DNA of 64,000 nt, from assembly GCA_044892505.1 (NCBI GenBank), contig CM097882.1, forward strand, positions 157,790,001 to 157,854,000, written 5' to 3'. Shown piece by piece: positions 4,926 through 61,200 of this stretch (within the stretch, counting starts at the first letter, position 1; every line of letters starts with the position of its first letter). Below the pieces are notes generated by a model. It was not told the origin of the DNA, ran no database searches, and worked only from the letters and a program-made list of their open reading frames with translations. Both the position numbers and the translations under genes were made by a program. This DNA is from Schmidtea nova (taxonomy: Eukaryota).

Positions 4926-4983
4926 AATTATTAATACTGGTGTGTTGGTTAGATGGACAACTGAGATCATTTGGATTTTATGC

Positions 4984-5155
4984 GTTAGGGTGATCTCACC
5001 AACATAAAAACCGATCCCCGCTGACACCCATGATGTATCCCTAACTACTCATCATGTTGGTGCTGTGTCAACGTTGTGAAATGACAAGGCAGGTGAGCAA
5101 CCTCGCGGTTACTATTCCCTTGTTTATTCACGGGTCCACCACTACCGATAGAAGG
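4984..5155 (-). ncRNA. conserved pseudoknotted cis-RNA element, copy A
   Basis: Sense CCTTCTATCGGTAG...CTGCC stem, GTAACC-GCGA-GGTTGC hairpin, CATGATG/CATCATG hairpin whose loop GTTAGGG pairs with downstream CCCTAAC; homologues at 11674, 43384 and 48117. Confidence 0.7.
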
Positions 5156-5330
5156 TTTCTGTGGATTTCATTCGGTCCCGATTATATGCGCTCTCTCGTT
5201 GTACTAGGGTAAACTCAATTATTAGGGTGCCTGTAACCTCAAATGAATCAGTTTGGTTTACTTTACATTTAATTTTCCAAGCATACCATAGACAAACAAA
5301 TCAAGCCAATCAGCGGTTACACCTTTATTT

Positions 5331-5888
5331 TTAGCTCAAAAATACAGACGGTCTGATCACATCTAATAACTGGTTCTCTGTGAGTCCGCTTAACAAATCC
5401 ACTTCAATGCCCAGTCGTTCGGCATACGCTCTGCGCTCACGTCGTTTCTTCGCCCCTAGGCGATTGCGACGTTTGGTCCTCTTCGAGCCTTCCGGTGGCG
5501 TCGATATCGCTGGGGTGGACGTCATAGGGTCGGGTTCTGTCTCGGTCTGAGTACTGGTAGTGATAGCAATCGTATCCACCCATCGATTGAATGTACTCGC
5601 CCGGATCATGGGGCGTAATTGTTGGGTAATGAACTCCTGCGTGGAGGTTTTCAGGTAATTGTGTAATTCAAGCTTTACGGCCACTACTTCTCTCGCTTGT
5701 TCCTCGGCTACTCGCTCTGCTCGGTACCGGGCTTGTAATATCGCTTTGACCCTCTCTGGATTAAACCAAGTGGTCTTGATGCGCTGGTGTTCTTCGTTCA
5801 ACTGGCGCAATCGACTCTCGAGAACCTTAGAGCGGGCCTTATGCTCCCGGGCCTCTCGCTTGTAATCACGGGAGTTTTCAGTATTCAT
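5331..5888 (-). CDS. LTR-borne ORF2, coiled-coil protein with arginine-rich motif (185 aa, intact)
   Basis: Homologous to 12051-12612, 42494-43069 and 48595-49179 (WF(N/S)PE, IRxxxFxRW, K/RxRLGxxxRRxRR); acceptor TTTTTCTTTGTAG directly before ATG; AATAAA right after the stop. Confidence 0.8.
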   Translation of the reverse strand: MNTENSRDYKREAREHKARSKVLESRLRQLNEEHQRIKTTWFNPERVKAILQARYRAERVAEEQAREVVAVKLELHNYLKTSTQEFITQQLRPMIRASTFNRWVDTIAITTSTQTETEPDPMTSTPAISTPPEGSKRTKRRNRLGAKKRRERRAYAERLGIEVDLLSGLTENQLLDVIRPSVFLS

Positions 5889-6120
5889 CTACAAAGAAAA
5901 ATGTGTGTTCAGTTCGAGTTATGATGAAACGAGGGTTGGGTGTTCCCGGCTGCCCCTATCCATTAAGTTGTTATAATTCAACGTTCTGTCAGTTTCGCAT
6001 TCTTTAAATTTCTCGGCACTCATCTCATTCAGAAATCACAACAAGACTTTTCTACAAAATTTTATTTGGTTAAAACAAAAATTCAGTTGGTTTCTTATGT
6101 CCCGATGAAGACATATCTTC

Positions 6121-6765
6121 CTAGAAGAAAGGCCGTATCTCTTGATCCATGTTTCGGTCATCTCGTCTCTTTCCATCGGCTTGGTACAGTTCTGGGGACG
6201 GGTGCCAACAAAGTTTATCTTTGTATGCAAACACCTCCCATAATCGGAGTTCGCTCGGATATGGGTTGGGCTCCAAGGTTACGCTTCCGGGCGCGTGTGA
6301 GTAGAGCTGGATTTCCCCAGTGTCGCTACACCAAGGCCTATCCAGGAGAAGATATCCGAGCCTATAGAATGCCGGGCCCGTCATGATTTCGGTGCATAGG
6401 ATCCAGCGAGGCTGTCCCGCTTCGTCAGTCATTTGGATGAACCATCGCGAGAGGTTCAGGTTGGGCTGGCTCGGAGATACCGACCAATCCGAGTCTCCTT
6501 CCCATCGCAGTTGGAATTCGAATGAGCACGAGGCGACTCTGGCCGCGGGGCTGGTGTGTCGTCGCGTCCACCTGCGAAGGTGTCGGCAAGCTTGCCGAAC
6601 CCTCTGAATGGGTGCGTCCTCCGTCCCTTGAAGTTTCCTTCCTCCTTGTCTATCCGTGTGCTGCTCAGACATGGAGTGCGGGGGTTTCCGGCTCCTTTTA
6701 ACTCGATTTGACTGCTGCTGGAATGATGAAGTCGACATCGGAGTGATAATGTTTTCGAGCTTCAT
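6121..6765 (-). CDS. LTR-borne ORF1, unknown function (214 aa, intact)
   Basis: Shares the WEG-x-x-x-W...FI-x-M-x-D/NE-x-G-x-PRWI pattern with 13023-13307 and, more weakly, 49506-49982; acceptor TTTATTACGACAG directly before ATG. Confidence 0.7.
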   Translation of the reverse strand: MKLENIITPMSTSSFQQQSNRVKRSRKPPHSMSEQHTDRQGGRKLQGTEDAPIQRVRQACRHLRRWTRRHTSPAARVASCSFEFQLRWEGDSDWSVSPSQPNLNLSRWFIQMTDEAGQPRWILCTEIMTGPAFYRLGYLLLDRPWCSDTGEIQLYSHAPGSVTLEPNPYPSELRLWEVFAYKDKLCWHPSPELYQADGKRRDDRNMDQEIRPFF

Positions 6766-7626
6766 CTGTCGTAATAAATAATTTTTGTTGAGTGATCATC
6801 ATTGATTTTTCGTTATGCGTTTATAGTCGATCATTCCACGCAGATTAGTGATTTAGTCGATCTTATGCATGTGGGTGGCTAGTAGCCAGACGGCTCACCA
6901 TCGGTTGATCGGTGTAATAGACCGTGCTATATTCGTGGGACTGTACGTTGGTTATCATCTGTCACTAGATATTGGTATCATTTTAGAATTATTGACAATC
7001 ACTCAAATCACACATCACAACCGAAATACTGGCATTTGTTTCATTACTAGTTTCTAAATCCCCATCACTCCCGCCAACATACATCATCACCCTTTGGGTG
7101 CCTCATCGGTATCTATCAATGATCATCGCTCTTTAGAGTGAATTGGGGTTTGGACCTAGTAAATTTTAACCCCTGTATGAAATGCTCATGCACTATCAAC
7201 CTTAAATTTTGGTGTTCACCCCTTGTCCTGAATTCTCTGTGGTCCGCAGTAGGTATTCTGTATTATCTCCACCTCGTCTGATATACGGTCGACACGATGT
7301 TTCTCGACATCCCATGTGCATCCCTTTCCCCGATCAATAATTAGTTAGTACACCTAGGGTCTCGCCGCATCAGCACCTCATATGAAAATATGTTGTGCCG
7401 AGAGACCGAGAATCCCGTCAGACCGTTAGGCCTTCGGGACGATCCTTACTGATTTTAATATTATTATGAGGGTTTAAAATCAAAGAAAACACCAAGTTAA
7501 CCATACCTTTTATTTCGATGCTACTTTCTCGTTGAAAATCTCACAAAGTTACAGTTAGTTCACATTCGATAAAATGGCTGATAACCAGTGACTGGCAAAA
7601 AAGTGACCCTCATACTGATTTCGCTT

Positions 7627-7668
7627 CAGTATTTATACTAAGTTTATGTTGTTGGCCGGCCAATCAGC
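7627..7668 (-). promoter_or_regulatory. LTR promoter (TATA plus CCAAT box), copy A
   Basis: Minus-strand GCTGATTGG followed ~20 nt later by AGTATAAATACTG; same pair at 41050-41090 and 50877-50923. Confidence 0.7.
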
Positions 7669-8127
7669 ATCGAGTATGTGTGTACTTATTGCTACTCATT
7701 TATGTTCGTCAGTCTTTCTGTGTAATTCTATTCAGTAAGTTGTTTATTTAACCATGCGTTAATTCTTTGTTATGATTTATTTTATTTTAGATGTTCGGTG
7801 ATGTCCGCCCACGTCCTGTCATATTTTCAGATTTATCTGATTTGCATGGGTGAGTTTTTATTGTTACTTTATTTTGATTTATTCTTTTGTTGTTTTCAGA
7901 TTCTGCCGCGTATAGCTGACTATTTGCTGATGGTAATTGATTTTTGTTGTTATTTTTATGTACATTTATTTCATTAAATTTTTATTACTTTTCAGGTGAC
8001 TGCTGATTTGTCTGGCCCAACATTAATATTATCTATAATATTATTATTATTTACCAAATGAATTGCGAATTTATTAAAGCTATGTAAACATAACAAAATA
8101 GAAAATAAAATTCAGATATTAAAATGT

Positions 8128-40270: not shown

Positions 40271-41049
40271 ATTTAGAGAATAATCAGGTTGTCTCCCATG
40301 AGGTTAGCTATCGTGCTGTTGTTATTAGTTGAGAAGTGCAAATTGAATTTAACCCGTTCGGTGCGCAACATATTTTTGAGATTTTGTTCTCGCTGTCAGC
40401 TCATATTTCAGTGGTTGCGTGATTATTCGTGTTTATTCCACAGAATGCTAGAAACAACTAAGTGTAGGAGCCTGATCATGGTAAATATATTGAGCATTCA
40501 AATCTGCAGGATGGAACATGCTCGCAGACGCTTAAATTTATTATAACCAACAAAGCCCATTATAGGACGAATTTAGTAAAATTGATTTTTGAAATTGCTG
40601 TTGAGAATTCCTTCAAAATATCAGAATTCATTCGTATTTGTAATTTTAAAAATAAAGTTAAAGTTCTGAAGCGTTAGTTGATTTCATGACATTTCAAATT
40701 TTCATGACAATTGGTTAATCATCTAACCATATATCTAAACATTTTTTCTGAAGTGCTTATTGGTTTATGTCAATAATCATAAAGATCTGTTAACTAAAAA
40801 TAGAGTTACTAGTGTGGCGGGGAAAAATTATTATTTTAAGGAAATCTTTGGCAATTATTATTTATTAAAATTAATTAAATAATGTATAAAAATGTAATGA
40901 GAAATGAGAATTATTGATTAAGAAATATAATAATATGTTTATAAATAATTAATTAAGAAAATAAATAATAAAAATTAAGATCGATTAAAACAAAAAATTC
41001 TGATAAATAAATTTATAAATAAATTGGTTTTACGACCATCAGCTTGAAA

Positions 41050-41090
41050 CTGATTGGTCGGTGTGCTGATCTGATCAGTATAAATACTGA
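41050..41090 (+). promoter_or_regulatory. LTR promoter, copy C
   Basis: CTGATTGG followed by TCAGTA-TAAA-TACTGA (TATA inside an inverted repeat). Confidence 0.7.
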
Positions 41091-42493
41091 ACCAGAATCT
41101 GATAATTTTAATGCATGATTTTTGTATAAGTCAGTTGAACTTAAATTTGGATCAGAAATTTCACTGAAACTATCTTGAAAGGTATGACTGATTTTATTTT
41201 TTTGGTAAATTTTGGTAGTTTATGTTATTATGATTTCTGTCAAATTGTTTCATAGTTAATAATATTTCTTGAAAATTTAAATGTTTATGATTATTTTTTA
41301 TAATATATAATTAGCTTGTGCTCCTTCCACTGTGTAATCGGTGGAAGGAGGCGACCCTAGTAGGGGTATCTAAGATGCCGCGTGGAGGGTTAGCCATCTT
41401 CGTAGTACTCGGTGCTACGAAGACGGTAGGGAATTGATGTTAAATTTTTGTTATTAATGCTGGCAACTATAGCCAGATTACTAATATTCTTACATTGTTA
41501 AATACTTCTATATAGTATGATTAGATAAATTTCATTGTTCACTACTATCAAGATTTATTCTGAACAACATAACATTTATTTGGATATTGCACATTGTGGG
41601 GTTTGCGCACGAGGATACCAAAAACTCTGTAAATATCTGATAGAGATTCCACAAATAGTTAGGATAGACGACATTCGATTCAATCTAATTGATCACGATT
41701 TTTGAGTACCTATTTTCAAGGCGCGTGTTGACGCTTATTTCCAAATTGTGATGTTAATAACAGATTAAGTATTCCAAATCGAGAGAATTAATGATGAGAC
41801 AGAAATTTCTTTTGCGGTACTATACTACATAAATAGATTGAGAATTGCAATTGACTATCATTCTAAACAATTGGGATAGATCGAGGAAACCTACATAATC
41901 CCTTACTCGTTGCGACATTGAGGGGTATCACATACATAAATCGATTACGTAAATCCAGATTTTTTATTTAAATTCAATTCTGATGGCAAGCGCGGATCTA
42001 GACGCTGTGTGGTAAATATCGTGACTGAAATAGCAAGATCAGTGTAGGTATTTGAAGCGGCCTACTCTGATGCATAGTAAATTGCTGATAGAACATTTAT
42101 TGAATTTGATCGACCACAAATATGAATGAAATTAAATGATTATCCTGATCCCTGTATATAGAGCAGAAGATCTCATTTTATAAATACAAATTATCCTAAT
42201 TGCTGTAGATAGCACAGGTATAAATAAATAAAACTAAATGAATTAAACTGATCACTGTACATAGCGACAGTGTTTAAAGAAATTTTTTATGTCTATTTTT
42301 CTTCTCTCATTTCCAACTTTCCATATAATAATTACGAGAGAATCATCATTCAAACGATGGCATAAAGTCTGTCGGGGTTATAAGATGGATTATCGAGTCA
42401 AAGTAATTCATAAAGAAATCTTAGCAACATTCATTTATCAATCATTTATTGTGAAATTTAAACAAGAAATAATAACTATTGATTTTCAGAACT

Positions 42494-43069
42494 ATGTTGT
42501 CAAATAACTCAAGCTCGCAAACTGAATTAGATAAGGCTTGGCTATTCATTCACAGCCTAGAGAAGGAAATCAATCTAACCAAAGAAAAGCTAAAAAATTC
42601 TGAAACAACAAATTCACATCTTCGCAAAAGCTGGTTTAGTCCAGAACAAATGAAAAGTCAACTTATAAAAAATCAACGCGCCCAACGAGCCGGAGAAGAG
42701 TACCGCATCGAGCTCGAAGTAACGAAAATAGAATTAAGGAAATGTCTGCGCTCGGTGACGACGTCATTCATTGACACTGAGTTGAAGAATCTAATACGGC
42801 CAGTTACTTATCAACGCTGGTCGGAAGAAAAAGCTGGATGTTCTATAGAAACTAATACCGAAGGGTTTCCGCAAATCCCTGAGGTTATAACAACAACAGC
42901 ACCGAAAATCTCATCTGCAATTGAAATTAAGAAAAACAAGAAAAACAAAATGGGCTCACGCCAAAGGAAGTGGAAAAAACAATTCGCTCAACAGAGAATC
43001 CATCACAATGATGAAATTCCAGAAATCGATCTGACGACAGATTTCATGACATGGGATGAGGATTTTTGA
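42494..43069 (+). CDS. LTR-borne ORF2 (intact)
   Basis: Acceptor GATTTTCAG ends at 42489, ATG at 42494; WFSPEQMK, LRKCLRSVT, LIRPVTYQRW, KNKMGSRQRKWKK. Confidence 0.8.
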   Translation: MLSNNSSSQTELDKAWLFIHSLEKEINLTKEKLKNSETTNSHLRKSWFSPEQMKSQLIKNQRAQRAGEEYRIELEVTKIELRKCLRSVTTSFIDTELKNLIRPVTYQRWSEEKAGCSIETNTEGFPQIPEVITTTAPKISSAIEIKKNKKNKMGSRQRKWKKQFAQQRIHHNDEIPEIDLTTDFMTWDEDF

Positions 43070-43383
43070 AATTTTTTGATTAAATTACTGAAGTTAAAGT
43101 CTTATTAGTTTGTACAAATATAGTTTTATTATTTTCTTTAATTAAATTTTTGTAAAGTAAAGTAGTTTAAAGAAAATTTATTATTAAATGTCGAACGGAA
43201 TTAATCAAGTATAATTTATGTTAGAAGGGTATTCATAAAATTTAAGAAACGATCAACATTAGGATTTAAAGTAGAATATATAATAATTATTCGAATTAAC
43301 TGTTGATATTGTAAGAAGGGGCAGGAATAATAAAATGAAAGATAATGAATTCAGATAAAGTAAAGTGAAAGTAAAGCGTAAGT

Positions 43384-43567
43384 CCTTCTATCGGCAGCGA
43401 CGAACCCGCGAACATAAATGGGGAGTAGTTCTAGAAATAGGGCTCCCCTGCCCATCATTGTTAAAACACCTTACACATTTTCAACTCGACTATCCAGGGA
43501 AATAGTCGAGGGTGCTTGTGTGTCACGTAAGCATTTTATGTTTGGTCGTGGATGGAGGCATCCCTAG
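43384..43567 (+). ncRNA. conserved pseudoknotted cis-RNA element, copy C
   Basis: CCTTCTATCGGCAG...CTGCC, GGGGAG/CTCCCC, CTCGACTAT/ATAGTCGAG hairpin with loop AGGGA complementary to downstream TCCCT. Confidence 0.7.
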
Positions 43568-43899
43568 AGCATGTTTTCTGTTTAATTTTAACCCATCCAT
43601 GACCACAACAGTATTCTAGGTTATTATATTTTGATAAATAAATTCTTAGTTTTATCCTCAAATTATTAATTTTATAATAAATTATAAACTTGGCAATCCA
43701 CTGTTATTAAAAAAAGCTAGCGGCAACTTTTCTCTAATCTTATTCAGCCTAACCTAGCCAAATCAAGCTCAAATCTACTTCTTACACTCATTTCTCATCT
43801 TATTTAAATTCGAAATCGTCATTCATCATTACTTGCTAAAGCTGGGAAATTAAAATCTTGTATAAATTTGTCTAATTCATTATCAGCGTAATTGCCTTA

Positions 43900-46303: not shown

Positions 46304-47902
46304 CAAGGGTGTCAAACTTATAGGCTTACATGGGCCAAACAAACAAGGTTTAAAGTTAGGTGGGCCGTAAAAAAATCAATATTCATAGAAACGTAGATTT
46401 ATCTTGAATAATACATTATAATAAACATATGCAAAAAAACAAGAGAAATGTAATATTTACGTCCTGAAACTTGACATCTCTTCTCTGCTTCTATTTTTCC
46501 AATTTCGGGATAAACTTTATTCGCAGTTGTTGAGGATACCTAAAATACAAAATAATATAAAAATAATAAAATTACCTGGGAAAAATCATCATGACGAAGG
46601 AGACGGTCAATGGAAACACAGAAAAGAAAACGGAAATAAAAAGAAATGAGAAATGAGAAAGAGGAATCAGACAAAAGAAATCAGAAAAAAGAAATCAGAC
46701 AAAAGAAATCAGACATGAAAACAAAAACATAGGTCGGCACTAATTAATTAGTACAAAAGGAAAAGGAATTTCAAATTGGGAAAAACAAAAATAACAATAA
46801 TGAATTTATCTCGACAGCTTGTCAGAGATAACGAAAACGAAAAGAAAACACGCCGGAGCGGCAAAAAGGAAAAAAAATTAGCCCGAGTGCCGAGCTGTTA
46901 AAGACAGCATGGGAGTTCTAAAGAATATGGAAAATATGAGATGCAGAAATGGAAAAAAAGAAAAGAAGCGAGTTGTCCCGAGTGCCGAATTTTCAAGGGC
47001 AATGTGGGAGTCGTAGAGAGAAAATGGGAAATGCCAAAGACGGGAGTGGCAAAGGCGAAAAAGCCATAAGTGAAGGACGATGGTGAACTATAAAAGGCGA
47101 AAGCAATCGGAACAAAATCAGAAGTAAAATCGGAGAAGTAAAATTGAAGAAGCAAAGTGGAAATGAAATTAGCGAAGAAAATAGAGAATTCGAGTTGTAA
47201 TTGAGACGAAAAGTGAGTGCGTAAAATTAGAAAACTATAAAAGATTTAAATTGTATTTTGGAGAACCAAGATCGAAACAATTTAATTGATTGAATAAAAA
47301 GAGTCAGAGCGGTTAACAACGAATAAAGTCAGAGTGCGGAAACAATCGAAATCAATTACCAATATTAAATCCAATCAGTGGTTAGACGTTGTTGTTTTCT
47401 AGACATTATACAATTGAGCTATTCTTCACGAAGTGTCATAATAAGCGTGTATAATTGTCGAAAGAGGTGTTGAAATGAGCGTGATATTTTGAATCATGTA
47501 AATCATTGTAATAGTCAAATAAAGTTTGTGTTATTGAAAGTGTTGTTGGGGTCAATGAAAAGCATCTTTAGAGTAAGATATTTGATTGGCAACGTTTACC
47601 ATTTCACCAACAACTCCAGAACCCAACACAGTGATGACAGTCAGTAGCCTAACTTTTGACATATTTTAGATAATATTTATGCTTAAATACCGTATTTACT
47701 TAATTGTGGTATATTCAAAATAAATGTACGCATTTTGTTTAATAATTGCAAAAAATAAAGTATAAATAATAAATGTTTAGCGAATTCTATCTATATAATT
47801 TTTTTCTGCGTCGGTTTGTTATTTTATTATATATTATTGTGTGCCGATAATATGGCCGGGACCAAAATGGTTCATTGCAGGCCGTGAGTTTGACCTCCCC
47901 TG
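46304..47902. mobile_element. hAT (Charlie-like) MITE split by a solo LTR
   Basis: TIR CAAGGGTGTCAAACT / AGTTTGACCTCCCCTG with GGGCC subterminal motifs; TSD not matched. Confidence 0.55.
46528..47628 (+). mobile_element. solo LTR, 1101 bp
   Basis: TGTTGAGG...CCCAACA with perfect TSD CAGT; close relative of 14812-15914. Confidence 0.9.
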
Positions 47903-48116
47903 AGCTAAACCATTTTGTCGTAGCTCCTCAAAATATTTTTGCTTCCACAGAAGATTGACGAAAATAACTCTTTTGCCAGGTTCCATTGCCCTATTTTGAA
48001 CCTAGTTCTCTACAAAATTCATAAGTTCATCATATCTGCTGGGATTATGGGTGGGTTTTAAGTAATTCAGATAAATAGTTAATCATTAATTGAACGACTA
48101 CTGATGAGTACGTATA

Positions 48117-48296
48117 CTAGGGATTCCACGCCCATAACCATACATAACATGACTACTACACGCGTATGCCCTTGACTATTCCCTACTAGTCAAGTTGGTA
48201 CTGCATACGGTGGTGGAAAAATGATGGGCAGGTGAGCTTTGTTGCCAAAACTACTCCCCATTTATCTTCCCTCGGGTCCTTGCTGCCGATAGAAGG
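48117..48296 (-). ncRNA. conserved pseudoknotted cis-RNA element, copy D
   Basis: CGTATGC/GCATACG and CTTGACTA/TAGTCAAG stems; loop TAGGGA pairs with downstream TCCCTA. Confidence 0.7.
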
Positions 48297-48594
48297 TCTT
48301 ACGCATTTACATTCTAGGGATGTTCGCCCTACTGAATTTTGTACTACATATCCTTATGATCTATCATACGCTTTTCCCAATGACTTTCTTTAATTGATCT
48401 ACAATGTAATTAATCAGTCCCTGCGTAGAAACGGTCGGTTTGAGAAAATTTCGGGTGCGATTTTTTATTTCGATGATTTCATTGTTGTTATTTTATTTTA
48501 TTTAGTAACATCACCCGATGAGAGACAAAATTTACACAGAAAATACTTTTATTAAAATACTAAAATCAGGTTGTTATTTTACATAGATATTTTC

Positions 48595-49179
48595 CTAAGC
48601 GAATTCCAGACTGATCTCCTGAATCAACTCCGCTTCGGTTAAGGAGTTCAAGTGGTGGATTTGTTCGTCCAGGCGCTTTGCAAATTCTCGGCGACGACGA
48701 CGCTGTCGCGATCCCATTCGGTGTTTTCGAAGCTGTTGGTTTATGACCGGTGCTGACGCTATTGTTCTCGGGGGATCACTGAGAAAAATAGACAAGTCTT
48801 CCGTTGCGAGAGTGGGGGCCATGATGATTTCCTCTTCCGTCCCGCAAGCGACATCTTGGTGAGTGCATTGTATCCAGCGCTGAGCCGTGATCGGCCGGAT
48901 TAGCGCTCGTAATTCGGAGTCGATGTAACTTCTTGTTACTGCATTTAGGCAGTTTCGGAGTTCCCGCTGGACGGCATCTAGTTCCAATTTGGTTGCGGCC
49001 AGTGCTTCCTGCATCCGCTCAAGTTTTTTCGACTGGTCCTTCATTTGTTCGGGTGAGAACCACTTCGCTCTCAATTCATCATTGGCGACCGTGAGTCGCT
49101 TGATCTGTCGCTGCTGGTCCCTCAACTTCCTTTCTTGGATTTGTCCCATGATTTTCTTAGAATTTTCTGAAGTCGGCAT
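48595..49179 (-). CDS. LTR-borne ORF2 (intact, MPTSENS...)
   Basis: First ATG at 49179, 5 nt after acceptor ATATTCAG; WFSPEQMK, LRNCLNAVT, LIRPITAQRW, KHRMGSRQRRRRREF. Confidence 0.82.
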   Translation of the reverse strand: MPTSENSKKIMGQIQERKLRDQQRQIKRLTVANDELRAKWFSPEQMKDQSKKLERMQEALAATKLELDAVQRELRNCLNAVTRSYIDSELRALIRPITAQRWIQCTHQDVACGTEEEIIMAPTLATEDLSIFLSDPPRTIASAPVINQQLRKHRMGSRQRRRRREFAKRLDEQIHHLNSLTEAELIQEISLEFA

Positions 49180-49505
49180 GTTGTCTGAATATGATAACGA
49201 TAAATTCGCTGGAGGACCTATCACCAATGTTATTTTATTTAAACAACTATTTATTATTATTAAACGAGTTACATACTAATGTTTTTAATTATTGAGTTCT
49301 TTGCAAAATTATTTAACTACCTAATTATTGAAGGCTCAAAAAATTTATTGAACTAATTTGAGATTATTAAATGAAATTCCTAATGACTATAACAACTACA
49401 ATACTAAATATTAATAAATCTACATTACAACACTATTAACAAAATGAACATTTCAGATTTCTTTAAAACATTTATTTAATTTAGAACAGGTGGCCATTGA
49501 TGTAA

Positions 49506-49982
49506 CTAGTTATCTTCGGTCATTTTTCCTCGATACGAAAATATCGATCTGATTTGCAAATTTGTATGGATTCCTGTGCTATTGGACGAGGCCTGCTGAA
49601 AACGGGTTCTCTCCGCTTCTCGAAGGGGTCGTATGGCTGTATTGAACTTGAACCCCAATTCCTTGAAGGTAGAGGCTGGAATGAACCCCCAATAAATGAC
49701 ACATTTCGGGAATCCTCCCTTATCCAACATCAGAACGAACCAGGCGGCGTGCCATGATTCGAATTCCTCGTCTGGAATGATTGGCCAACTAGCGCATCCC
49801 CGGTACCATACGTGATGCCGTGGATGGTCCCATACCGTAAATGGACAGGCGATTTCGAGCTCTCGGCGCCATGCCCACATTTTTTGATGGATTTGCTGTA
49901 AAATCTCGAAAGGTGCCGGCTTTAATGGGCTAACTCGGGCTCGTTCTTGTCGTTTTTTGATAGTGTATCTATGCTTAGTCAT
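49506..49982 (-). CDS. LTR-borne ORF1 (158 aa)
   Basis: WYRGCASWP...WFVLMLDKGGFPKCVI resembles the copy A/B ORF1 core; acceptor AAATTCAG ~15 nt before ATG. Confidence 0.62.
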   Translation of the reverse strand: MTKHRYTIKKRQERARVSPLKPAPFEILQQIHQKMWAWRRELEIACPFTVWDHPRHHVWYRGCASWPIIPDEEFESWHAAWFVLMLDKGGFPKCVIYWGFIPASTFKELGFKFNTAIRPLREAERTRFQQASSNSTGIHTNLQIRSIFSYRGKMTEDN

Positions 49983-50876
49983 GATTCCAAAACGATGCTG
50001 AATTTTATAATAGTTACAATTTACATCAATAATTAATCATAGTAAATGTTATCTCTCATCGTGATACCCTTATTATTTGCCTTCCCCTTAGACCTTAGCT
50101 GAAATCAAGGAAAACTGTCGTTCGTTACGGTATGCATTACTCTCGTATCTACTTAGCTTTATCTGTTTACGATCAATATTATAGTTGAAAAATGGTGATT
50201 TGTCTGCTTGGATTTTTAAAATATTGATACCTCAACACGGAAGCTCTCTCCCGTCATGTATCCCTAGCTTATTCGAAAAACGCTCTTTTGTACCAAATGC
50301 GGTCGACAAAATTTTCTGAGGTTTATTAGACGTTTATCTAGCAACAATTCGTGCCTCCCCACGGTTAAAGAATTCTTTCATATCTTTAAGCTTTATCAAA
50401 AATTTATCGTCCCCTCCGTAGCCAAAACGATCAGAAAATAATTCCCCGGATTTGTTGGGTGTCCCATGTGCAAATCTCATCCATCACTAACAAAATTATG
50501 TTTTGTTATTTATTACTTTACCGTGTGTGGAGCCCTCGAGCACCACGCCACGGACGGACACCTTGGGAACCTAAAGCTCCCAACGGCGCAAGATTAATAT
50601 GATAGTTTAAATAGTTTAAATATAACATAAATCATGAGATAACTAATAAATTATAATATGATAATGACATACGAATACAACGATATCATAAACGTAAATA
50701 TACCAAAAATACCTCAATTGAATTCTGAAAATTTATTGATCAAAATCGGTCTAAACGGTGATCGTCGTCGGGGCAATGTGCAATCTAATGTGAATTTTTA
50801 GTTAAAGTCTAAATTTCAGTCTAACAAAGTCTACTGAAGTCTCACTCTAGTCAAAACGTCTCTTTTTATGAAAAAT

Positions 50877-50923
50877 CTGATCAGTATTTATACTGATCAG
50901 TCGTGTCTAGACCGACCAATCAG
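50877..50923 (-). promoter_or_regulatory. LTR promoter, copy D
   Basis: CTGATCAGTA-TTTA-TACTGATCAG palindrome containing TATAAATA on the minus strand, CCAATCAG box adjacent. Confidence 0.7.
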
Positions 50924-51491
50924 GTTCGGCCATTTTCAGGGTGGTTTTTAATTATTGTTCTTGATTCTAATTAATTTTTATTTTTTAGATTGTATTCTTC
51001 CTTGGAGGTCCGGGTTTCAAAAACAATTATTCAATAACAAGTACTTTTATTTTGTTTTAATTACCATTATTTGTATTTATTTTGTTTTTTAGATGTCTCC
51101 TGGGCCAGTTAATATCTCGAAATTCCTTTATTTTTATTTATAGCTTGTATTTAGTTTATCTATATTTTTACTATATTATTCCTTTCTTTTAATAAATAAA
51201 TATTCCCCTTTTTATCTTATTTTTCTCTTTTTTGTTTTAATTAATCCACTTTTATTTCACTGTTCCCTCTATTTGGCTGGCCCAACATCACTCGGGGACC
51301 CCTAAAATTGCGTCCCGCAATTAATTATACATTTACACCTATATCATCATACATAAAAATTAAGCAGATAAATGTCAATTTACATATACACAAAGAATCA
51401 CATAAGGTGATAGATTTTATACGTAAGCACAAAGTCATATTATTGTTAAATGTAAGTGGATCATACATAAAGTGAATGTAATATATCAGTT

Positions 51492-53207: not shown

Positions 53208-53324
53208 TGCTATAATTTCAAAAAAAAAATTTTTTTAATCGGTTTATATATCAGTTATTTTTTGTTTATATAATAATTTTTGGGTATTTAACTGTACACA
53301 TTATTTACATGATCACTTCTCTTG

Positions 53325-54707
53325 TTACGTCAACCATCCTTTTCTATCCGCTTTCTCATTCCTTTCCATTTCTATGTATAGGGTGTCTGCATATAATCGT
53401 TCCCATAAGCTTTCTTTCGTTATAAACATCGGTTCTCCCGCTGCTAATCCACATTCTGTGGTTGGTTTCTCGCTCGTACTCGCATGTTTCTCTGTCTCAA
53501 AGAATTTTTCCACCGGTTTTGCTACACTTCTGATTCTTATAATGACTCCTACTTTCAAGGGCCATTCTACTAGGTCGTCGTATTCTCCTTTACATAGCGA
53601 GAAAAATATTGACACATGTGTTCCTCGTCCTCTTCCGTCTCCATTTGGGTATAGCTTCAATCTCATTTTAGCTCCGTTTCTCCATAAATAAAATGGTGGG
53701 CTTATTACTGCTGTTTTCGTCATATTTCTGGCCTCTGTTAATTTGTCTCTAAAATCTGTCACTTTCCACACATATGGTGCGATTGGTAACTTTTCCTCGG
53801 TATCCTGGGTGAGTTTGTTGTACTGGATTTTCATTCCTTTAGCCAGTTCTTCGATAGCTTTTATCTTTTCCTCCATCTTTTCTCGTGTTAGTTCGAATTG
53901 CTCTCTGGTTTCCAACAGTAGGTTTACCATTATCTTGTGTGACTCTATTTCTCTTTCTAATTTTTTGATTGTTTGTTCGGTTTCTTTTGTTGCTTCGTTT
54001 GTCATTTCCGCATGCTTTAGCAATGCTTCCTCCAGATGTTGTTTCATGGTTTTTTGCGTTCTTTTCTCCATACATCCCTGTTTGTTATAAGGACATTCCC
54101 TTGGTTTCTCCGTGCACACTTTCCAATGTTCTTGTAATTTTACTTCTACCGTTATCTCGCATTCGTTTGAACATATTCCTACATATTGTCTACATACTTT
54201 CTCCTCTTTTACATTCAGGTGTTCTTCTTCGATCTTTCTCCTCGTTTCTCGAGTTCCACAATATTCGCATAGACTTTCCTCTTCTTTACATTCATCTTTG
54301 TGCTGCTCTTTATTCTTTATAGTTATTTTTTGTTGGCATTTGTTACATTCAGTTCTCTTCTCTTCGCAGTTCTCCAGATGGTTCTCGAGATCGCGTATTT
54401 GTCCTTGCCATATACATGGTTGATTTATACATTCGGTTTTCGTGTTCATGATTTCTCTCTGAGTTTCTCTATCTGGTCCGGTTTCTTCGAATTTTATTTG
54501 TCCTTCTTTGCATTCTGGACATTCTGGTGGTCTTTTCATACTTAACTCGTGTATGCATTTGGTACATACTCTGCATCCGCATAGGGTTTGTCTTGGTTTC
54601 AATATTATGTTTTTACAATTTACACAAGTGAGTCTCTGACTCCATTTCCTGTTCTCGGCTCTCAAAATTTCGATTATCCGCTCTTCGGCTTTTCCTTCTG
54701 TATTCAT
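53325..54707 (-). CDS. TRAF: TRAF-family protein (RING, TRAF zinc fingers, coiled coil, MATH), intronless
   Basis: CVNC...CGCRVCTKC...CPEC RING; CxxxC/HxxxC zinc fingers; MATH motifs VWKVTDF, SPPFY, LYPNGDGRGRGTHVSIFF, EYDDLVEWP; acceptor CATTGTAG 1 nt before ATG. Confidence 0.92.
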   Translation of the reverse strand: MNTEGKAEERIIEILRAENRKWSQRLTCVNCKNIILKPRQTLCGCRVCTKCIHELSMKRPPECPECKEGQIKFEETGPDRETQREIMNTKTECINQPCIWQGQIRDLENHLENCEEKRTECNKCQQKITIKNKEQHKDECKEEESLCEYCGTRETRRKIEEEHLNVKEEKVCRQYVGICSNECEITVEVKLQEHWKVCTEKPRECPYNKQGCMEKRTQKTMKQHLEEALLKHAEMTNEATKETEQTIKKLEREIESHKIMVNLLLETREQFELTREKMEEKIKAIEELAKGMKIQYNKLTQDTEEKLPIAPYVWKVTDFRDKLTEARNMTKTAVISPPFYLWRNGAKMRLKLYPNGDGRGRGTHVSIFFSLCKGEYDDLVEWPLKVGVIIRIRSVAKPVEKFFETEKHASTSEKPTTECGLAAGEPMFITKESLWERLYADTLYIEMERNEKADRKGWLT

Positions 54708-54797
54708 TCTACAATGATATATACACTTGATTTGTTATCTATTTTTTGATTTTTCTTGTTTTTGTTTTACATATTTACAATTTTTCGCTTTATTTAT

Positions 54798-55154: not shown

Positions 55155-55279
55155 TTTCTAAATTATATACATTAATCGTTTTCTCGATTTCTCTTTTTAT
55201 ATTTTTATAATATCGATACCCATACTATTACGGTAATGCATTGTTATTTACACTATTATTTACAGTCATATCCCGCCTC

Positions 55280-58200
55280 CTATATCACCATCACTGTCTT
55301 TCCTTCGTATCGCTCTTCATCTTCTATTTGTCTCCAAAATTCTTTACCTTTCGTCCTCCTTTGGAATTCTTTATGTACTTCTTCCGGTAATTCTATACTG
55401 TAGTTCATGATCTTTATATCTGGCCAATGTGTTATTGGTTTCTTGTTGAATACATCATATATCCATATTATTAATAATACTGTTATTACTGGAATAGTTG
55501 CTGCTAGTATTCCTAGACCAATTAGTTCTCTAACTTGTTTGTTTACGTCCATCTTCGTAATTTCACTCTGGTTAATCATTGGTCCGTATTGTCCCTTTAG
55601 TTTATTTAGTAGTTGTTCTCGTTCTTGTTGTTTTCTTTTAACTTCTTTAATTACTTCTTCCGGCGTCCATCTTGCGTAAGGGTCTATTACTACTTGTTCC
55701 GCGTCCATTTGTTTCGTTGTCTGACTTAATTCTTTAAATTCGAGTTTTCTCACTTTCCCTTTGGACGTTGAGTTTACCGGTGTGTAGTACGTTTCGCATC
55801 TTTCCTGCTGATTTCCCAGTATGTCCGTCTTTTCTATCGCACATATCTCGTATTCGCTATTGAATTTCAGATTTCTGATACTTATTTCCTCTTTTCCTTT
55901 CGCGTTTCCACAGTCTCGTGGCTGTCTTTCCCTTTGTTTCTGAACTATTACCCAACATATTTCTAACGTTTTATTGTCTATTCTCCATAGTATAAGAGTT
56001 GCTGTAGTATTCTTTTCGGTTTTTATTTGTATATCTTGGTTTTTCTGTTGTCCATTAGGTTTAAAGGTAGTGGTATACCTCGCTTTTCCTTTGTTCCGTT
56101 GTCTTCTACTTTTTCGCGTTGTCTTTCCAGCTCTTGTTCTGGTGGGTGTTTTATATAATCTGCATTCCAATTCATTTACTGTTATTTTGTCGCTTTTCCT
56201 GATCAGGCATATTTCGTACGTTTGATTGCTTTCTAATCCTTCTATCTGTATTGTGGTTGTTCCTCTGTTTGTTCGACATTGCGGCGGTGTATTCTGGTTT
56301 GTTTTCCTTTCCTGCTTCTTCCAGCATACGCCTTTGACGTCCGGTTCTATCCCGGTTAACTCTAACATTATAGTTGTTCTCCGTTTGGTGCGTTTATTTC
56401 TTCTTCCTCGTCGTATGAACTTTATTGTTTCCCCAGGTTGAAATGTTTTACAAATTGTCGTTCCTTTCTTGTGTCTTTCTTTTTCTAGTAAACATAGTTC
56501 ATACGTCCTGTCTGCTTTTACTTCTGATATTTTGGTTACTTTATTTGTTTTCCTTTTCCGACTCGTCTTTATTTCGCTTACGCCAATTTCTTCGTTGCTT
56601 CTGGCCCAACACTTTGGGTTGGTGTTTTGGGTGTCGTTCATCTCTGTTACTGCCATTGTGTCAATGTCTATCCCTTCTTCTAACCGTTTTAACATTGTTA
56701 ATATGAGTGCTAAACATAGTAATTCTGTTTGGTAGGTCACTCTTTCGGTCTCGTTTGTGGTTACTCTTGCTTCGGGCCTGTCTATGGTAATTTGTATAGT
56801 TGGCGTTGTTCGTCTGTCTATTGTCTGAGGTTTCTTGTTTTTTGTTCCTTGTGTCTCTGTTCTTCCACACTTTCCTACAACATAGTCTCCTTTGGATGAC
56901 TGCTGTATTGTTATGGTTACTTTGGGCGTTAGGTAGTTTGCACATGCTATTGTGTTGTGTGATCTTGGATTCTTTTGTTTTCTGATGGTGCATATTTTGT
57001 ACCAAGTATCTAGCTCTAAGTCATCGATCTCTATGATTCCTTGTTCATATTCTGAGATCCTGCAATCCATTGGACTATTTTGTCCCGATATTTTGTCCTT
57101 TTTTGACCAACATACTCGTTCGATTCCTTTTGCGTTTCCAATTTGTATTGTCGCTCTTTCTTCACATATCATTCCTTGAGTTGGACTAATTAAGGTCATG
57201 ATTACCGTTAGTAATAATAGTTCTGGTTTAAAGAATGGGTTTATTGTTTGTTTGTAGCCTGTTCTTTTTGCTTCGTTTTTATTTTTATAGTTGTTGTTTC
57301 TTTGTTTCCCAAATTCATTTTTCTTATCATTTTTCTCTGTGTCCCTTCCTTTCTCTTCACTGTCCTCTTCATCTGATAACTCATGATCCTCTGGATTTTC
57401 TCGAGTACTATCGTCGTCGTTTCCTGTATTGTCGCCTCCCCTTTGGTCGTTGAAAATGTCGTCCTCGACATTAATTGCTTCTATCATTTTTTCATACGTT
57501 ATGGTTGTGAGTATACTTGCTTCATATTCTTGTGTTACTGCCTGCTTAGGTATTTCCTTATCGGTTAATTTACAATCTAGAATCTCTTTCTTGGCTTTTA
57601 TCCAATTATTAAGGTACGTTTTCATTAGTTCTTTCCATTTGTCCGTACGTTCTGTTTCCTTTGGGTTGTTTGTGAATCGTAAATCTTTTCTTCTCATGAA
57701 GATATCTATTATCTTTGGCCATTTGTTTATTATTAATGCACACTTTATATACAAATTTTGGCCTTGTTCCATGCATTCGTTGATCCTGAATGCTGGTTCA
57801 TTGGTGTTTGGGTTCATCCAATTGAGTATTGCTTCAGTTAGTTCAGCGTTATGCATCATGGAATGTACGCTAGCTTTTTTAACTGTCCTTGTAAGGTATT
57901 CTATTTCCTCCTGATTTGTGATTGTTTTTATGAAATTTATCACCTCCCAATTGTGCGCTAACAACGCTACGTCTAGTATTGAGCTGTCTTTGTTAGTTCT
58001 TCCCATGAGTCCTGCACCTGCTTCGTACAGTTCCTGTAACACTCGGGTTTTTGTGTTCGCTCTTGCTGCGAATATCATGAGGGTATCTCCCTTTTTATCT
58101 TTCATGTTCATGTCACTTCCGCAATCTTGCATCAACCGTGCAATTTCGACTACCCTCCTATCTTTTCCTGCTCGTAAGGCTCTATGTATTGGCAATACTC

Positions 58201-61200
58201 CATTCTTTGTTAATAAGAAAGTCACTGGCATTTCTCTTTTTATGATCATCATATCGTTTTCATTGTAAGTTCCTTCCGCATATGCGTGTACCTTTTCCAC
58301 AATTGCTCCGAGTATCTCCAGTGTATGTTTAGAATTTTCGAATTCTGGTAATAGTTCTTTTGCTTTGTCCTGTATCGCATCTAACCTTTCTTGATATGGT
58401 ACTTCTGCGCTGAAAAGTGGTGTAAATTTCCTTTTGCTTTCTCTTTCCTTTCGACATAGGAATTGTTTGCATTTTTCGGGGTGGTTTAATATGTCTATTA
58501 GTTTGTCATACTCTTCTTCCACCGTTTTGTATTTATCTTGAAAATTGGATATATCTTTGTAAGTTATCGTCTTGGTTAGCGATTTTGCACACCATTCCCT
58601 AATTTTCCTGAATAATGCTTCTTTTTCACTTTCGAATTTACACTCCTCTTTGTTTTTGGAAATTGTAATATTTCTTCTGTCCAATAATATTAACAGTGTT
58701 TTCTGATCACAAACTAATTTTAATAGGAATTGTAATAACGCGTTTTGTCCTTTACTGTATACTTCGTTTATATTTAATACCCATGTATCATTTTCGGATC
58801 TTTTCCATTTTATTAGCTTGCGTATTGTTTTGCAGTTACCGATTTTTATTGCCTCCTTGATTATATCACCTTTGATCAGTTCGTCTATTTCCCAAGTGGC
58901 CTTCTCGATTATTCGTTTGAGCATTATCTGATTTGAGCTCCATATTGCGTGATTCAAGACTGTTTTGTTTTCTCTATCGCGCTCCGTCCAGTTGAAATCG
59001 GCATTTATCAAAAGGTCTATTATTGCCTTATCCGATTTGTAGATGGCTGCTACCATTAATGGTGTTTCTTGTTCGCTATTCCCAAAACCAAGGTGTTGGT
59101 TGGTTTCCTTTGCGATTTTTAGAAGTTCTTTTACCCTCTCTACTTCTCCCCATTTTATGGCGTTATGTAATGCTGGTTGTCCTCCTATGTCTTCTAGTGA
59201 AAGTATTTCTGGAATTTTCTCCAGTAGTTCTGAAATGACTGGTTTTGTTGGTAGTCCCCTTGCGTAATCACTAATTATAGACTGTATATCTCTTAATATA
59301 TCGTCTCTGACATGCCATTTTCCCATTATTTCTCTGGCTTTTAGTACAATTTCCTTGTTTCTTTTTCCTTGTTGATTGTTTTCTGCTTCGGTACTTTCAT
59401 TGGTTGCTCTGAGCATATTCATTCTGGCTGTCTGGGATCTAGTTATTATTCGTTCTTCTGGCGTTGTGGTTATTGTCTTTGGTACTTCTTTACATCTGCA
59501 TGTATTAACGTATATTGGTCGTATCAATGGTCGATTAACAAGTTTTACCTTCACATTGTTTTCCTTTTTGTATATGACTTCGTAAGGGCCTTTTCCTGGT
59601 CTTTGTAGTTTTTTAACGGTTCCTGGTATTATTTCTGGGGTTTCTATCATTACCCAATCTCCCGGCTTAAGATCATTTGTTTTAACATTTTTCTTTTGAT
59701 CGTGTAGGTCCTTGTAACTTTCCTGGTAAAACTTTATGTTTAGCTCTGCTGTCTTCCATATCTCTTGCATTCGTTCTTTGAATTTGGTGACGTAATCATC
59801 TTCCTCCATATATTGAGACAAAGGTGGTTGATATTCAAGATCTATTGGCATATTGCATTCCCTTCCATACATTAATTGAAACGGACTCAATTTTGTTGCT
59901 GCGTGTATCGACATTCGGTATGCCATTAGACATAGCTTTATGTACTCATCCCAATCTGTTTGGTGTTTGCTTACATAATTGGATAACATTCGAATCAATG
60001 TGCCGTTAAATCTTTCCGTTTGTCCATTGGTTTGCGGATGATATGGTGACGTTCGTAATTTGGCTATCCGGAAGTAATTTGTTACTTCATCTAATATTTC
60101 GCTCATGAAATTTGTTCCTTGATCTGTTAGTATTTGTTTCGGGGTTCCGTATCGACAACATATTTCCTCTACTAAAATTCTTGCTACCGTCTTTGCTTTT
60201 TGATCCGGCATCGCAAATGCCTCAGGGAATTTCGTCAAATAATCCGTTATTACCAATATATATTGATTCACATTTAAACTTTCTGGCAATGGTCCTATTA
60301 CATCCATCGCAATGGTAGTCATTGGTTCCGCTGGTATTGGCATGGGTTTTAAGGGATTTTTCCATTTCTTCCCACTATCCTTTCTTGTGGCACAAGTTAA
60401 ACAGTTCTTTATCCATTCCTTTACGTCCTCGTCCATTGTTGGCCAATAATATTTTTGTCTCATACGATCTAATGTTTTCTTATCGGACATGTGTCCTCCC
60501 AACTTTCCGTCGTGGTATTGAGTTATTATCTCTTTTCGTCTATTACCTGGCAGACACATTAATCGTTTTTCTCCATCCTGTATTAATAACCATCCTTTTT
60601 CTATTGTGTATCGATGTTGGTATTTCCTCATGTGTTCTTTTAACTCCGCATTGTCTTTGAATACATCCATATTCCGTGAGCTTAGGAATTCTATGATGGG
60701 TCTTAGTTCTTTATCCTCTTGCTGATCTTTCTTTAACTCGCTGAAATCCAAATCTTCTGCTATCATTATGCATATTCTTTGCACTTCTGGGTCTGTTAAT
60801 TCTGGAAACGTTAATCTTGACATGCAATCTGCGTTGGCATTCGCTTTTCCTGATTTGAATTTTATATCTGGTGAATATTCTTGTAATTGCATCGCCCATC
60901 TCATCAACCTGCTGGATGTTTCCTTATGTTGTCCTAGCCATACCAGTGGTTGATGATCCGTGGTTATGCATATAATGTGTCCCCATAATAGATATTTAAA
61001 GTGTTTTATTGCTAATATTATTGCCAATGCTTCTCTTTCCGTTACTGAATAATTCTTCTCGTGTTTCTTGAATGTTCTGCTATAATATCCGATTACCCGC
61101 TCTTTTCCCTCGTCATCATATTGTCCTAACACTGCTCCTGCTGCATATCCACTTGCGTCGGTTGCGAGTAAAAATGGCTTTTTGAAGTCCGGGTGAACCA

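What the first reader, a model, noticed from the sequence alone, without database searches (positions are those of the whole stretch)
4984..5155. Undescribed covarying pseudoknotted RNA in all four long LTRs
Four copies (4984-5155, 11674-11850, 43384-43567, 48117-48296) share a near-invariant 5' CCUUCUAUCGGYAG that pairs with CUGCC, plus ACCCG and GGGARUAGU motifs. Other stems change sequence but keep pairing. Outer stem: GUUGACAC/GUGUCAGC, GCUAGAUGC/GCAUCAGC, CGUAUGC/GCAUACG. Inner hairpin: CAUGAUG/CAUCAUG, CUCGACUAU/AUAGUCGAG, CUUGACUA/UAGUCAAG. The hairpin loop (UAGGG) pairs with a downstream CCCUA in all copies (7, 7, 5 and 6 bp). It lies after the polyA signal (U5), so in a 5' LTR it would sit just before the PBS and gag. 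Candidate roles are IRES, packaging/dimerisation signal, Rev-response-like element, polyA suppressor or ribozyme. I do not recognise it as a known family.
Basis: partly seen in the sequence, partly recalled or inferred. Interest (0 to 1): 0.88.

Follow-up and report, generated by a model that had tools for sequence, protein, structure and literature searches.

The report
Folded RNA ending flatworm retroelement repeats
A roughly 185-base RNA fold, kept intact by compensating mutations, ends four 2.4-3.2 kb repeat units that look like the long terminal repeats of giant 'Burro'-type retroelements of a flatworm; it is real and undescribed, but it is a familiar kind of element and its job is not shown.

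Summary
Four copies exist, and a covariance model built from them finds no others in the window: 4979-5155(-), 11669-11850(-), 43384-43573(+), 48111-48296(-). All start with the same invariant 11 bases. Five nested helices are supported by covariation: 15 of 27 pairs in the four core helices changed on both sides, 95% of cells stay paired against 31-46% when partners are slid, and 0 of 500 shuffles reach this. One helix carries GNRA loops in three copies. The loop-to-tail pseudoknot forms in all four copies (7, 7, 5 and 6 bp), but only one of its pairs covaries. No Rfam family matches.

DNA similarity between copies is confined to the RNA and a few short motifs. Each RNA ends a 2.4-3.2 kb unit. 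A unit has a TG start (seen in two units), a conserved CCAAT/TATA promoter, and two orphan ORFs recognisable only at protein level. Unit E4 directly follows a fusion-glycoprotein-PR-RT-RNaseH-IN-ankyrin polyprotein and a TRAF/MATH ORF. This is the published Burro architecture of planarians, so 'LTR' is likely but not shown.

My best reading is a cis-acting R-U5/U5 leader domain acting in primer use or packaging. The function is inferred. Only four related copies could be used.

The parts
4979..5155 (-). RNA copy c1, last ~180 nt of unit E1
   Evidence: Covariance model hit of 174.5 bits; sequence read.
11669..11850 (-). RNA copy c2, last ~180 nt of unit E2
   Evidence: Covariance model hit of 178.5 bits.
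43384..43573 (+). RNA copy c3, last ~190 nt of unit E3
   Evidence: Covariance model hit of 185.3 bits.
48111..48296 (-). RNA copy c4, last ~185 nt of unit E4
   Evidence: Covariance model hit of 190.9 bits.
43384..43394 (+). Invariant 5' 11-mer, shown for c3 and identical in all four copies. It marks the sharp start of similarity between the two subfamilies.
43408..43464 (+). Domain I in c3. Pa0 is 43408-43411 with 43461-43464; Pa is 43418-43422 with 43451-43455; Pb is 43427-43433 with 43438-43444, capped by a GAAA loop at 43434-43437.
   Evidence: Alignment A5 columns 26-83; pair counts; RNAalifold.
43467..43520 (+). Domain II in c3. Pc is 43467-43476 with 43512-43520; Pd is 43485-43491 with 43504-43510.
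43496..43565 (+). Proposed pseudoknot in c3: Pd loop 43496-43500 pairs with tail 43561-43565.
   Evidence: It forms in all four copies with one compensatory pair.
4979..8022 (-). Unit E1 (about 3.0 kb), an LTR-like repeat with no element-internal sequence beside it. ORF-A and ORF-B are both open.
   Evidence: A 5' 18-mer is shared with E4 only. Promoter motif. The 3' end is set by loss of similarity. No internal homology nearby.
11669..14110 (-). Unit E2. Its 5' bound is approximate. ORF-B is interrupted at least once and ORF-A is shortened.
   Evidence: tblastx to E1 and E4; TGCACATG motif.
40765..43573 (+). Unit E3. Its 5' bound is approximate. ORF-B is open; ORF-A is not recognisable. This is the most AT-rich copy.
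48111..51287 (-). Unit E4 (about 3.2 kb), the likely 3' LTR of the Burro-like element lying upstream on the same strand. ORF-A and ORF-B are both open.
5331..5888 (-). ORF-B of E1 (185 aa). It is a long coiled coil followed by a basic helix. Homologues lie at 12051-12488(-), 42479-43069(+) and 48595-49227(-).
   Evidence: Alignment A3 shows 25-41% identity. AlphaFold2 mean pLDDT is 74. No relative found anywhere.
6121..6765 (-). ORF-A of E1 (214 aa). Homologues lie at 12921-13307(-) and 49506-49982(-).
   Evidence: No Pfam hit. The structure model is poor, pLDDT 40.
7617..7672 (-). Conserved CCAAT-type box plus a TATA box in which 14 bases are identical in three units, about 395 nt into the unit. 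Also present at 41046-41090(+) and 50881-50927(-).
55280..63997 (-). Polyprotein ORF of the Burro-like element: fusion glycoprotein, PR, RT, RNase H, IN, ankyrin. It is open for 2905 codons up to the window edge.
   Evidence: Pfam. The architecture matches PMC6431247 section 7.
53325..54707 (-). Accessory TRAF/MATH ORF of the same element, followed by ORF 52146-53207(-).
   Evidence: Pfam; PMC6431247.

Best explanation
The RNA is a compactly folded, cis-acting domain that fills the last ~185 nt of the 2.4-3.2 kb terminal repeat units of Burro-like giant Ty3/gypsy retroelements. This is the R-U5 or U5 part of the repeat.

In a full-length transcript starting in the 5' repeat, it would lie directly before the primer-binding site. 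I think it most likely works there, in one or both of two ways:
- It holds the 5' leader in a shape that positions the primer for first-strand synthesis. The invariant 11-nt 5' end and the single-stranded G-rich and C-rich motifs would be the contact sites.
- It marks the genomic RNA for packaging or dimerisation.

Shown: the fold, its strand, its position at the end of the unit, and that it is the most conserved part of the unit.

Inferred: that the units are LTRs, that a PBS follows the RNA in 5' copies, and the function itself.
For: - Four helices each have 3-4 compensatory pairs, three copies have GNRA loops, and a loop-tail pseudoknot forms in every copy.
- G-U pairs outnumber A-C pairs 10 to 3 on the ORF strand. 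The sense fold is -33.0 kcal/mol against -28.3 for the antisense.
- The last 200 nt are the identity peak of the units: 54-74% against about 33-52% in the body of the unit; only bins at the 5' end come near, up to 67%.
- Similarity stops right after the RNA.
- E1 and E4 start with TG, within an 18-mer found nowhere else in the window.
- E4 follows the internal ORFs of a polyprotein element that matches published Burro features.
- Structured 5' leaders with pseudoknots that serve primer use, dimerisation and packaging are known in Ty1 (PMC5454406, PMC3681743). A structured R-U5 is also needed for Tf1-type self-priming (PMC4600332).
Against: - There are only four copies, in two pairs of close relatives.
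- No 5' repeat with its PBS is in the window, so adjacency to a PBS is unseen.
- The strongly conserved promoter lies about 2.6 kb upstream of the RNA. If it is the only start site, the leader would be unusually long and would carry two ORFs.
- Transcript ends are unknown.
- The terminal CCCTA..CA could owe part of its conservation to DNA-level recognition of the repeat end.
Confidence: 0.4

Rival explanations
1. It is a translation element (IRES-like). If transcripts start at the upstream TATA box, two ORFs of about 200 codons precede the RNA. A compact pseudoknotted fold just before gag could then recruit ribosomes internally.
For: The conserved promoter lies about 2.6 kb upstream, and ORF-A and ORF-B lie between it and the RNA. 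The fold is pseudoknotted with invariant single-stranded motifs.
Against: No hit to any Rfam IRES model at E <= 10. No ORF follows any of the four copies. The position of gag relative to the RNA is unknown.
Confidence: 0.13
2. It is a 3'-end or processing element. The fold begins where a polyA-type hexamer would direct cleavage. It could control use of that site, block 5'-3' decay of the downstream piece, or cut itself at its sharp 5' boundary.
For: A hexamer, or a one-base variant, lies at about -17 to -9 in all four copies. Similarity between the subfamilies begins exactly at the first base of the 11-mer.
Against: Only one hexamer is canonical, and such strings are common in AT-rich DNA. No known ribozyme model matches. 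Hammerhead-like strings in or beside the copies are not conserved between them.
Confidence: 0.15
3. It is a 3'-UTR element of the ORF-A/ORF-B messenger. It would act in export, stability or localisation, and might be bound by the basic helix of ORF-B.
For: It always lies 175-320 nt after ORF-B on the same strand. ORF-B has an arginine/lysine-rich helix. RNA and ORFs co-occur in all four units.
Against: The polyA-like hexamers lie before the RNA, not after it. No conserved signal follows the RNA.
Confidence: 0.15
4. It is an independent small RNA gene carried in the repeat, with its own promoter just upstream.
For: Copies 1 and 2 have a TATA-like box at -33 to -26, and copy 3 has a weak one at -29 to -24.
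Against: Copy 4 has no such box. Copies 1-3 have internal U-runs that would stop polymerase III. There is no Rfam match.
Confidence: 0.07
5. There is no RNA function. Conservation would reflect DNA-level signals at the repeat end, and the pairing would be accidental.
For: The terminal CCCTA..CA mirrors the TG..GGG start of the unit. The pseudoknot core never varies.
Against: 15 of 27 pairs changed on both sides and kept pairing. No shuffle out of 500 reaches this and slid controls give 31-46%. Stems change as fast as loops.
Confidence: 0.04

Closest known systems
Ty1 5' TIPIRT domain with its long-range pseudoknot (PMC5454406, PMC3681743)
   Same: Both are cis-acting, pseudoknotted leader RNAs of an LTR retroelement. 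The Ty1 domain serves primer use, dimerisation and packaging.
   Different: There is no sequence relation. The Ty1 domain extends into gag and pairs with a known tRNA primer. Here the PBS, the primer and the transcript start are all unseen, and the repeat is about ten times longer.
Tf1/Tj1 self-primer structure (PMC4600332 and the Levin papers cited there)
   Same: In those Ty3/gypsy-group elements the first bases of the transcript pair with the PBS, within a required R-U5 fold. Here an invariant 11-mer sits at a sharp 5' boundary of a folded ~185-nt segment at the repeat end.
   Different: The window holds no sequence close to the complement of the 11-mer (the nearest has 2 mismatches and lies about 1.8 kb from c1). 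No 5' repeat with its junction is available, and the transcription start is unknown.
Retroviral R-U5 leader stems (U5-IR type; my own knowledge, plus the Lin and Levin 1998 title)
   Same: The position at the end of the repeat before the PBS, and a role for structure rather than sequence.
   Different: Those are one or two stems. This is a two-domain fold with a GNRA-capped arm and a pseudoknot.
Self-cleaving ribozymes in terminal repeats of retroelements (hammerheads of retrozymes and Penelope-like elements, HDV-like at 5' ends of non-LTR elements; my own knowledge)
   Same: A structured RNA in a repeat or terminus of a retroelement, with a sharp conserved boundary.
   Different: No Rfam ribozyme model matches and no shared catalytic core motif is present.

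Membership tests
Any Rfam 15 family | Score at or above the family's gathering threshold | tested here: not met
   No hit in the whole window. At E <= 10 on three copies there are only unrelated weak hits that differ from copy to copy.
Known self-cleaving ribozymes (hammerhead, HDV-like, twister, hatchet, pistol, lariat-capping) | Match to the family model, that is core motifs plus fold | tested here: not met
   Cleavage activity itself cannot be tested with these tools.
Long terminal repeat of an LTR retroelement | Two near-identical direct copies flanking an internal gag-pol region | tested here: inconclusive
   The partner of E4 would lie beyond the window edge. E1 and E2 are direct but only 75% alike in the RNA, with compensatory changes, so they are not one pair. 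E1-E3 have no internal sequence beside them.
Long terminal repeat of an LTR retroelement | TG...CA termini, and position directly after the internal region on the same strand | tested here: met
   E1 and E4 begin with TG at the point where their similarity starts. c1 and c3 have CA five bases after CCCTA. E4 follows the last internal ORFs by about 200 nt. The ends of c2 and c4 are less clear.
Long terminal repeat of an LTR retroelement | Target-site duplication, polypurine tract and PBS at the junctions | tested here: inconclusive
   No clean duplication flanks E1. Only short purine runs precede E4. No PBS-like sequence follows any copy.
Burro-like giant Ty3/gypsy elements of planarians | Fusion glycoprotein in frame before PR-RT-RNaseH-IN, ankyrin repeats, and a MATH/TRAF domain as subdomain or accessory ORF | tested here: met
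   Pfam on ORF 55280-63997 and ORF 53325-54707, compared with the description in PMC6431247. No sequence comparison with named Burro copies was made.
Tf1-type self-primed elements | The first ~11 nt of the transcript are complementary to the PBS just after the 5' repeat | not testable with these tools
   No 5' repeat junction is in the window. The only near-complement has 2 mismatches and lies 1.8 kb away. The transcription start is unknown.
Leader packaging or primer-use domains (Ty1 TIPIRT type) | Lies in the genomic RNA next to the PBS and pairs with the primer or with a second genome copy | not testable with these tools
   This needs full-length copies, transcript maps and probing data.

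The most novel reading that the evidence does not exclude
The invariant 11-nt 5' end marks a true RNA end, and the fold is an active RNA device of a new class. It could be a self-primer structure of Tf1 type in an animal giant retroelement. It could instead be a new self-cleaving or exonuclease-stopping RNA that releases a stable ~185-nt species from the repeat.
Probability: 0.12. Interest if true: 0.75.

Novelty: new member of a known kind. Interest (0 to 1): 0.45.

Why it matters
Burro-type elements are very abundant in planarian genomes and are expressed there (PMC6431247; PMC8532177). Their non-coding signals do not appear to have been described. A fold this well supported by compensatory change gives three things:
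- a marker for finding and classifying their repeats;
- a candidate for the signal that starts reverse transcription or selects the genome for packaging;
- a clean test case for how a repeat of about 3 kb with its own promoter and two ORFs is organised into U3, R and U5.

Tried and rejected
- **Known RNA families and tRNA.** Rfam on the whole window and at a permissive threshold on three copies found nothing. ARAGORN found no tRNA.
- **More copies.** An exact-pattern scan of viral contigs found none. The scan of metagenome contigs gave one chance hit inside a bacterial gene (L001). The covariance model found no further copy in the window.
- **Protein relatives of ORF-B and ORF-A.** Nothing came back from the word-based search, a profile search of 1.84 billion representatives (43), viral contigs (47), PDB sequences, Pfam or Foldseek against PDB.
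- **E2 and E1 as the two LTRs of one insertion.** Rejected.
- **c3 and c4 as inverted ends of a DNA transposon.** Rejected, because each belongs to its own ORF-bearing unit and the two units face each other.
- **Helitron-type 3' end (hairpin plus CTRR).** The following base is not constant, and the covariation spans 180 nt with G-U pairs.
- **Telomere-template reading of CCCUAA.** Copies 3 and 4 have CCCUAG instead.
- **Hammerhead-like strings.** One lies beside copy 4 and one inside copies 1 and 2. Neither is conserved across copies.
- **Protein coding inside the RNA.** The antisense ORFs use different frames in different copies.
- **A shared offset.** Copies 2 and 3 are 31,715 nt apart, the same offset as a neighbouring repeat block. 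No similarity lies between them, so I treat this as coincidence.
- **A second conserved fold in the GC-rich leader.** The segments cannot be aligned.
- **Identifying the genome by exact protein look-up.** The protein is not on record, and its nearest relatives are only 23-31% identical over most of their length.

Full report
**What is there.** In RNA sense they lie on the minus strand at 5155->4979, 11850->11669 and 48296->48111, and on the plus strand at 43384->43573. All begin with the same 11 bases. A search for the 14-base 5' motif finds exactly these four exact sites. A covariance model built from them scores them at 174-191 bits, and nothing else in the window scores above 7 bits. They fall into two pairs: c1/c2 are 75% identical and c3/c4 are 72% identical, while identity between the pairs is 55-61%.

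**Is the fold more than chance?** RNAalifold on the four copies predicts 40 pairs, 19 of them with a compensatory change. I fixed a conservative model on alignment A5:

| Helix | Alignment columns | Note |
|---|---|---|
| Pa | 36-40 with 70-74 | |
| Pb | 45-51 with 57-63 | loops GCGA, GAAA and GCAA, plus one 5-nt loop |

- 95.4% of cells pair and 15 of 27 pairs changed on both sides.
- None of 500 column shuffles reaches the observed values.
- Sliding the 3' partners by 1-3 columns drops pairing to 31-46%, with 0-5 double changes.
- Adding a fifth helix (Pa0, 26-29 with 80-83) and the pseudoknot gives 92.7% pairing and 18 of 39 double changes.
- Pair by pair, nearly every two-sided change kept pairing. 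For c1 against c4 this is 14 of 14.
- Paired columns differ as often as unpaired ones, so pairing is conserved rather than sequence.
- G-U cells outnumber A-C cells 10 to 3. The sense alignment folds better than the antisense (-33.0 against -28.3 kcal/mol). The RNA strand is therefore the strand of the neighbouring ORFs.
- Single-sequence z-scores are modest, -2.4 and -1.8.

**The pseudoknot and the 5' motif.** The Pd loop can pair with the CCCUA tail in every copy, over 7, 7, 5 and 6 bp, always at the homologous site. Its GGG/CCC core never varies, and only one pair (G-C in c1, A-U in c2) is compensatory. I rate the pseudoknot as plausible, not proven. It also competes with the covarying Pa helix for two C's. 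The partners of the invariant 5' 11-mer cannot be decided, because everything it could pair with is also invariant.

**What surrounds it.** DNA similarity between copies is limited to about 200 nt, so these are not simply long similar repeats. At protein level, each RNA is preceded on the same strand by a homologous ORF-B of 185, 121, 196 and 210 aa with 25-41% identity. Three of the four are also preceded by ORF-A.

Further upstream, three units share a CCAAT-type box and a TATA box in which 14 bases are identical. A TGCACATG motif also recurs: exact in E1 and E2, with two mismatches in the flanking bases in E4, and a related form in E3. E1 and E4 share an 18-mer that occurs nowhere else in the window. 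Their similarity begins at its TG.

Similarity ends just after the RNA, and the last 200 nt are the identity peak of the whole unit. The units are therefore discrete blocks of 2.4-3.2 kb that begin with TG. At least c1 and c3 end with CA five bases after CCCTA.

State of the ORFs:
- ORF-A and ORF-B are open in E1 and E4.
- In E2, ORF-B is interrupted at least once and ORF-A is shortened.
- In E3, ORF-B is open and ORF-A is not recognisable.

ORF-B is predicted to be a long coiled coil with a basic C-terminal helix. Neither ORF has any detectable relative.

**What the units belong to.** Immediately upstream of E4, on the same strand, the following lie in order:
- a 2905-codon ORF running to the window edge, with a mononegavirus-type fusion glycoprotein domain, protease, RT, RNase H, integrase and ankyrin repeats;
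- a TRAF/MATH ORF;
- a 353-aa ORF;
- two short ORFs that look membrane-spanning by eye (not tested).

A glycoprotein in frame before pol, ankyrin repeats, MATH/TRAF as subdomain or accessory ORF, and a total length above 30 kb including LTRs are the published features of Burro elements of dugesiid planarians (PMC6431247). These elements are abundant and expressed (PMC8532177).

I therefore read the window as planarian-like DNA and E4 as the 3' LTR of a Burro-like element. E1-E3 have no internal sequence beside them and look like solo repeats of other lineages. This is inference, because no LTR pair is visible. c1 and c2 cannot be a pair from one insertion, since they diverged with 5 compensatory double changes and none lost.

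**How the repeat might be organised.** Two layouts fit the sequence.

- *Layout 1.* Transcription starts after the strongly conserved upstream TATA box. R then carries a possible GT..AG intron (read by eye, not tested with a tool), ORF-A and ORF-B. A polyA-type hexamer at about -17 to -9 ends R, and the RNA is mostly U5. Only c2 has the canonical hexamer; the others have one-base variants.
- *Layout 2.* A second start lies at the first base of the 11-mer. Copies 1 and 2 have a TATA-like box at -33 to -26, c3 has a weak one and c4 has none. The RNA is then R-U5, and the ORFs lie in a long U3 with their own promoter.

The sequence alone cannot decide between them.

**Most likely function.** In either layout the fold would sit just before the PBS in the full-length RNA. 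Known LTR elements keep structured domains for primer use, dimerisation and packaging at that position. Examples are the Ty1 TIPIRT pseudoknot (PMC5454406, PMC3681743) and the Tf1/Tj1 self-primer fold (PMC4600332). I commit to that class at confidence 0.4. The rivals are:
- an internal ribosome entry element, attractive only under layout 1;
- a 3'-end or processing element;
- a 3'-UTR element of the ORF-A/B messenger;
- a separate small RNA gene;
- DNA-level conservation alone, which the covariation largely excludes.

- All covariation rests on four copies in two related pairs.
- The genome and its near relatives appear absent from the protein collections.
- Before I knew what the element was, I ran pattern and protein scans of public collections. 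They returned nothing related.
- That step is listed under referred steps.
The covariance model and alignments were used only to search the window and to count pairs. Consensus lines printed by the alignment tool were not used.

Noticed in passing
window 52146-63997 (-): A Burro-like giant Ty3/gypsy element. One open 2905-codon ORF runs to the window edge and carries a mononegavirus-type fusion glycoprotein domain in frame before PR-RT-RNaseH-IN and ankyrin repeats. About 1200 further residues have no domain hit. Separate TRAF/MATH and 353-aa ORFs follow.
   Followed up: partly
window 5331-6765 (-), 12051-13307 (-), 42479-43069 (+), 48595-49982 (-): The repeat units themselves encode two orphan proteins, ORF-A and the coiled-coil, basic ORF-B. 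They stay open in several copies despite only 19-41% identity. No relative was found among 1.84 billion representative proteins. Coding capacity inside an LTR of this size is unusual.
   Followed up: partly
window 7617-7672 (-), 41046-41090 (+), 50881-50927 (-): A CCAAT-type box and a TATA box with 14 identical bases lie about 395 nt into the unit. An AT-rich GT..AG stretch that looks like a leader intron follows, then a GC-rich, hairpin-prone segment. The GC-rich segments could not be aligned.
   Followed up: partly
alignment A5 columns 93-94 with 134-135: Helix Pc exists in two states (C-G/A-U or U-A/G-C). Each state occurs once in each subfamily: c1 and c3 share one, c2 and c4 the other. 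This disagrees with the overall relationship and suggests repeated switching or exchange between lineages.
   Followed up: no
window 29271-33002 (+): A small, decayed LTR retrotransposon with ~140-nt LTRs that are 83-86% alike. Integrase-core and RNase H-like remnants are split over many short ORFs. The breaks were not counted.
   Followed up: partly
window 14781-15914 and 46500-47628; also 74-378 and 21281-21574: A purine-rich repeat family whose two long copies are about 73% alike overall (up to 86% in blocks); the two shorter matches are 68-72%. The two long copies lie at the same 31.7-kb offset as RNA copies c2 and c3, although those are in opposite orientation and nothing between them is similar. 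I treat this as coincidence.
   Followed up: partly
window 19843-25100 and 37658-37794: Extremely AT-rich arrays (down to 6.5% GC) of short tandem units of about 8-10 nt and nested palindromes, with related pieces 13 kb away.
   Followed up: no
L001 6526-6566 (-): The only metagenome match to the RNA pattern lies inside a 524-aa bacterial ORF on a 56% GC contig. It is a chance match of the expected frequency.
   Followed up: yes
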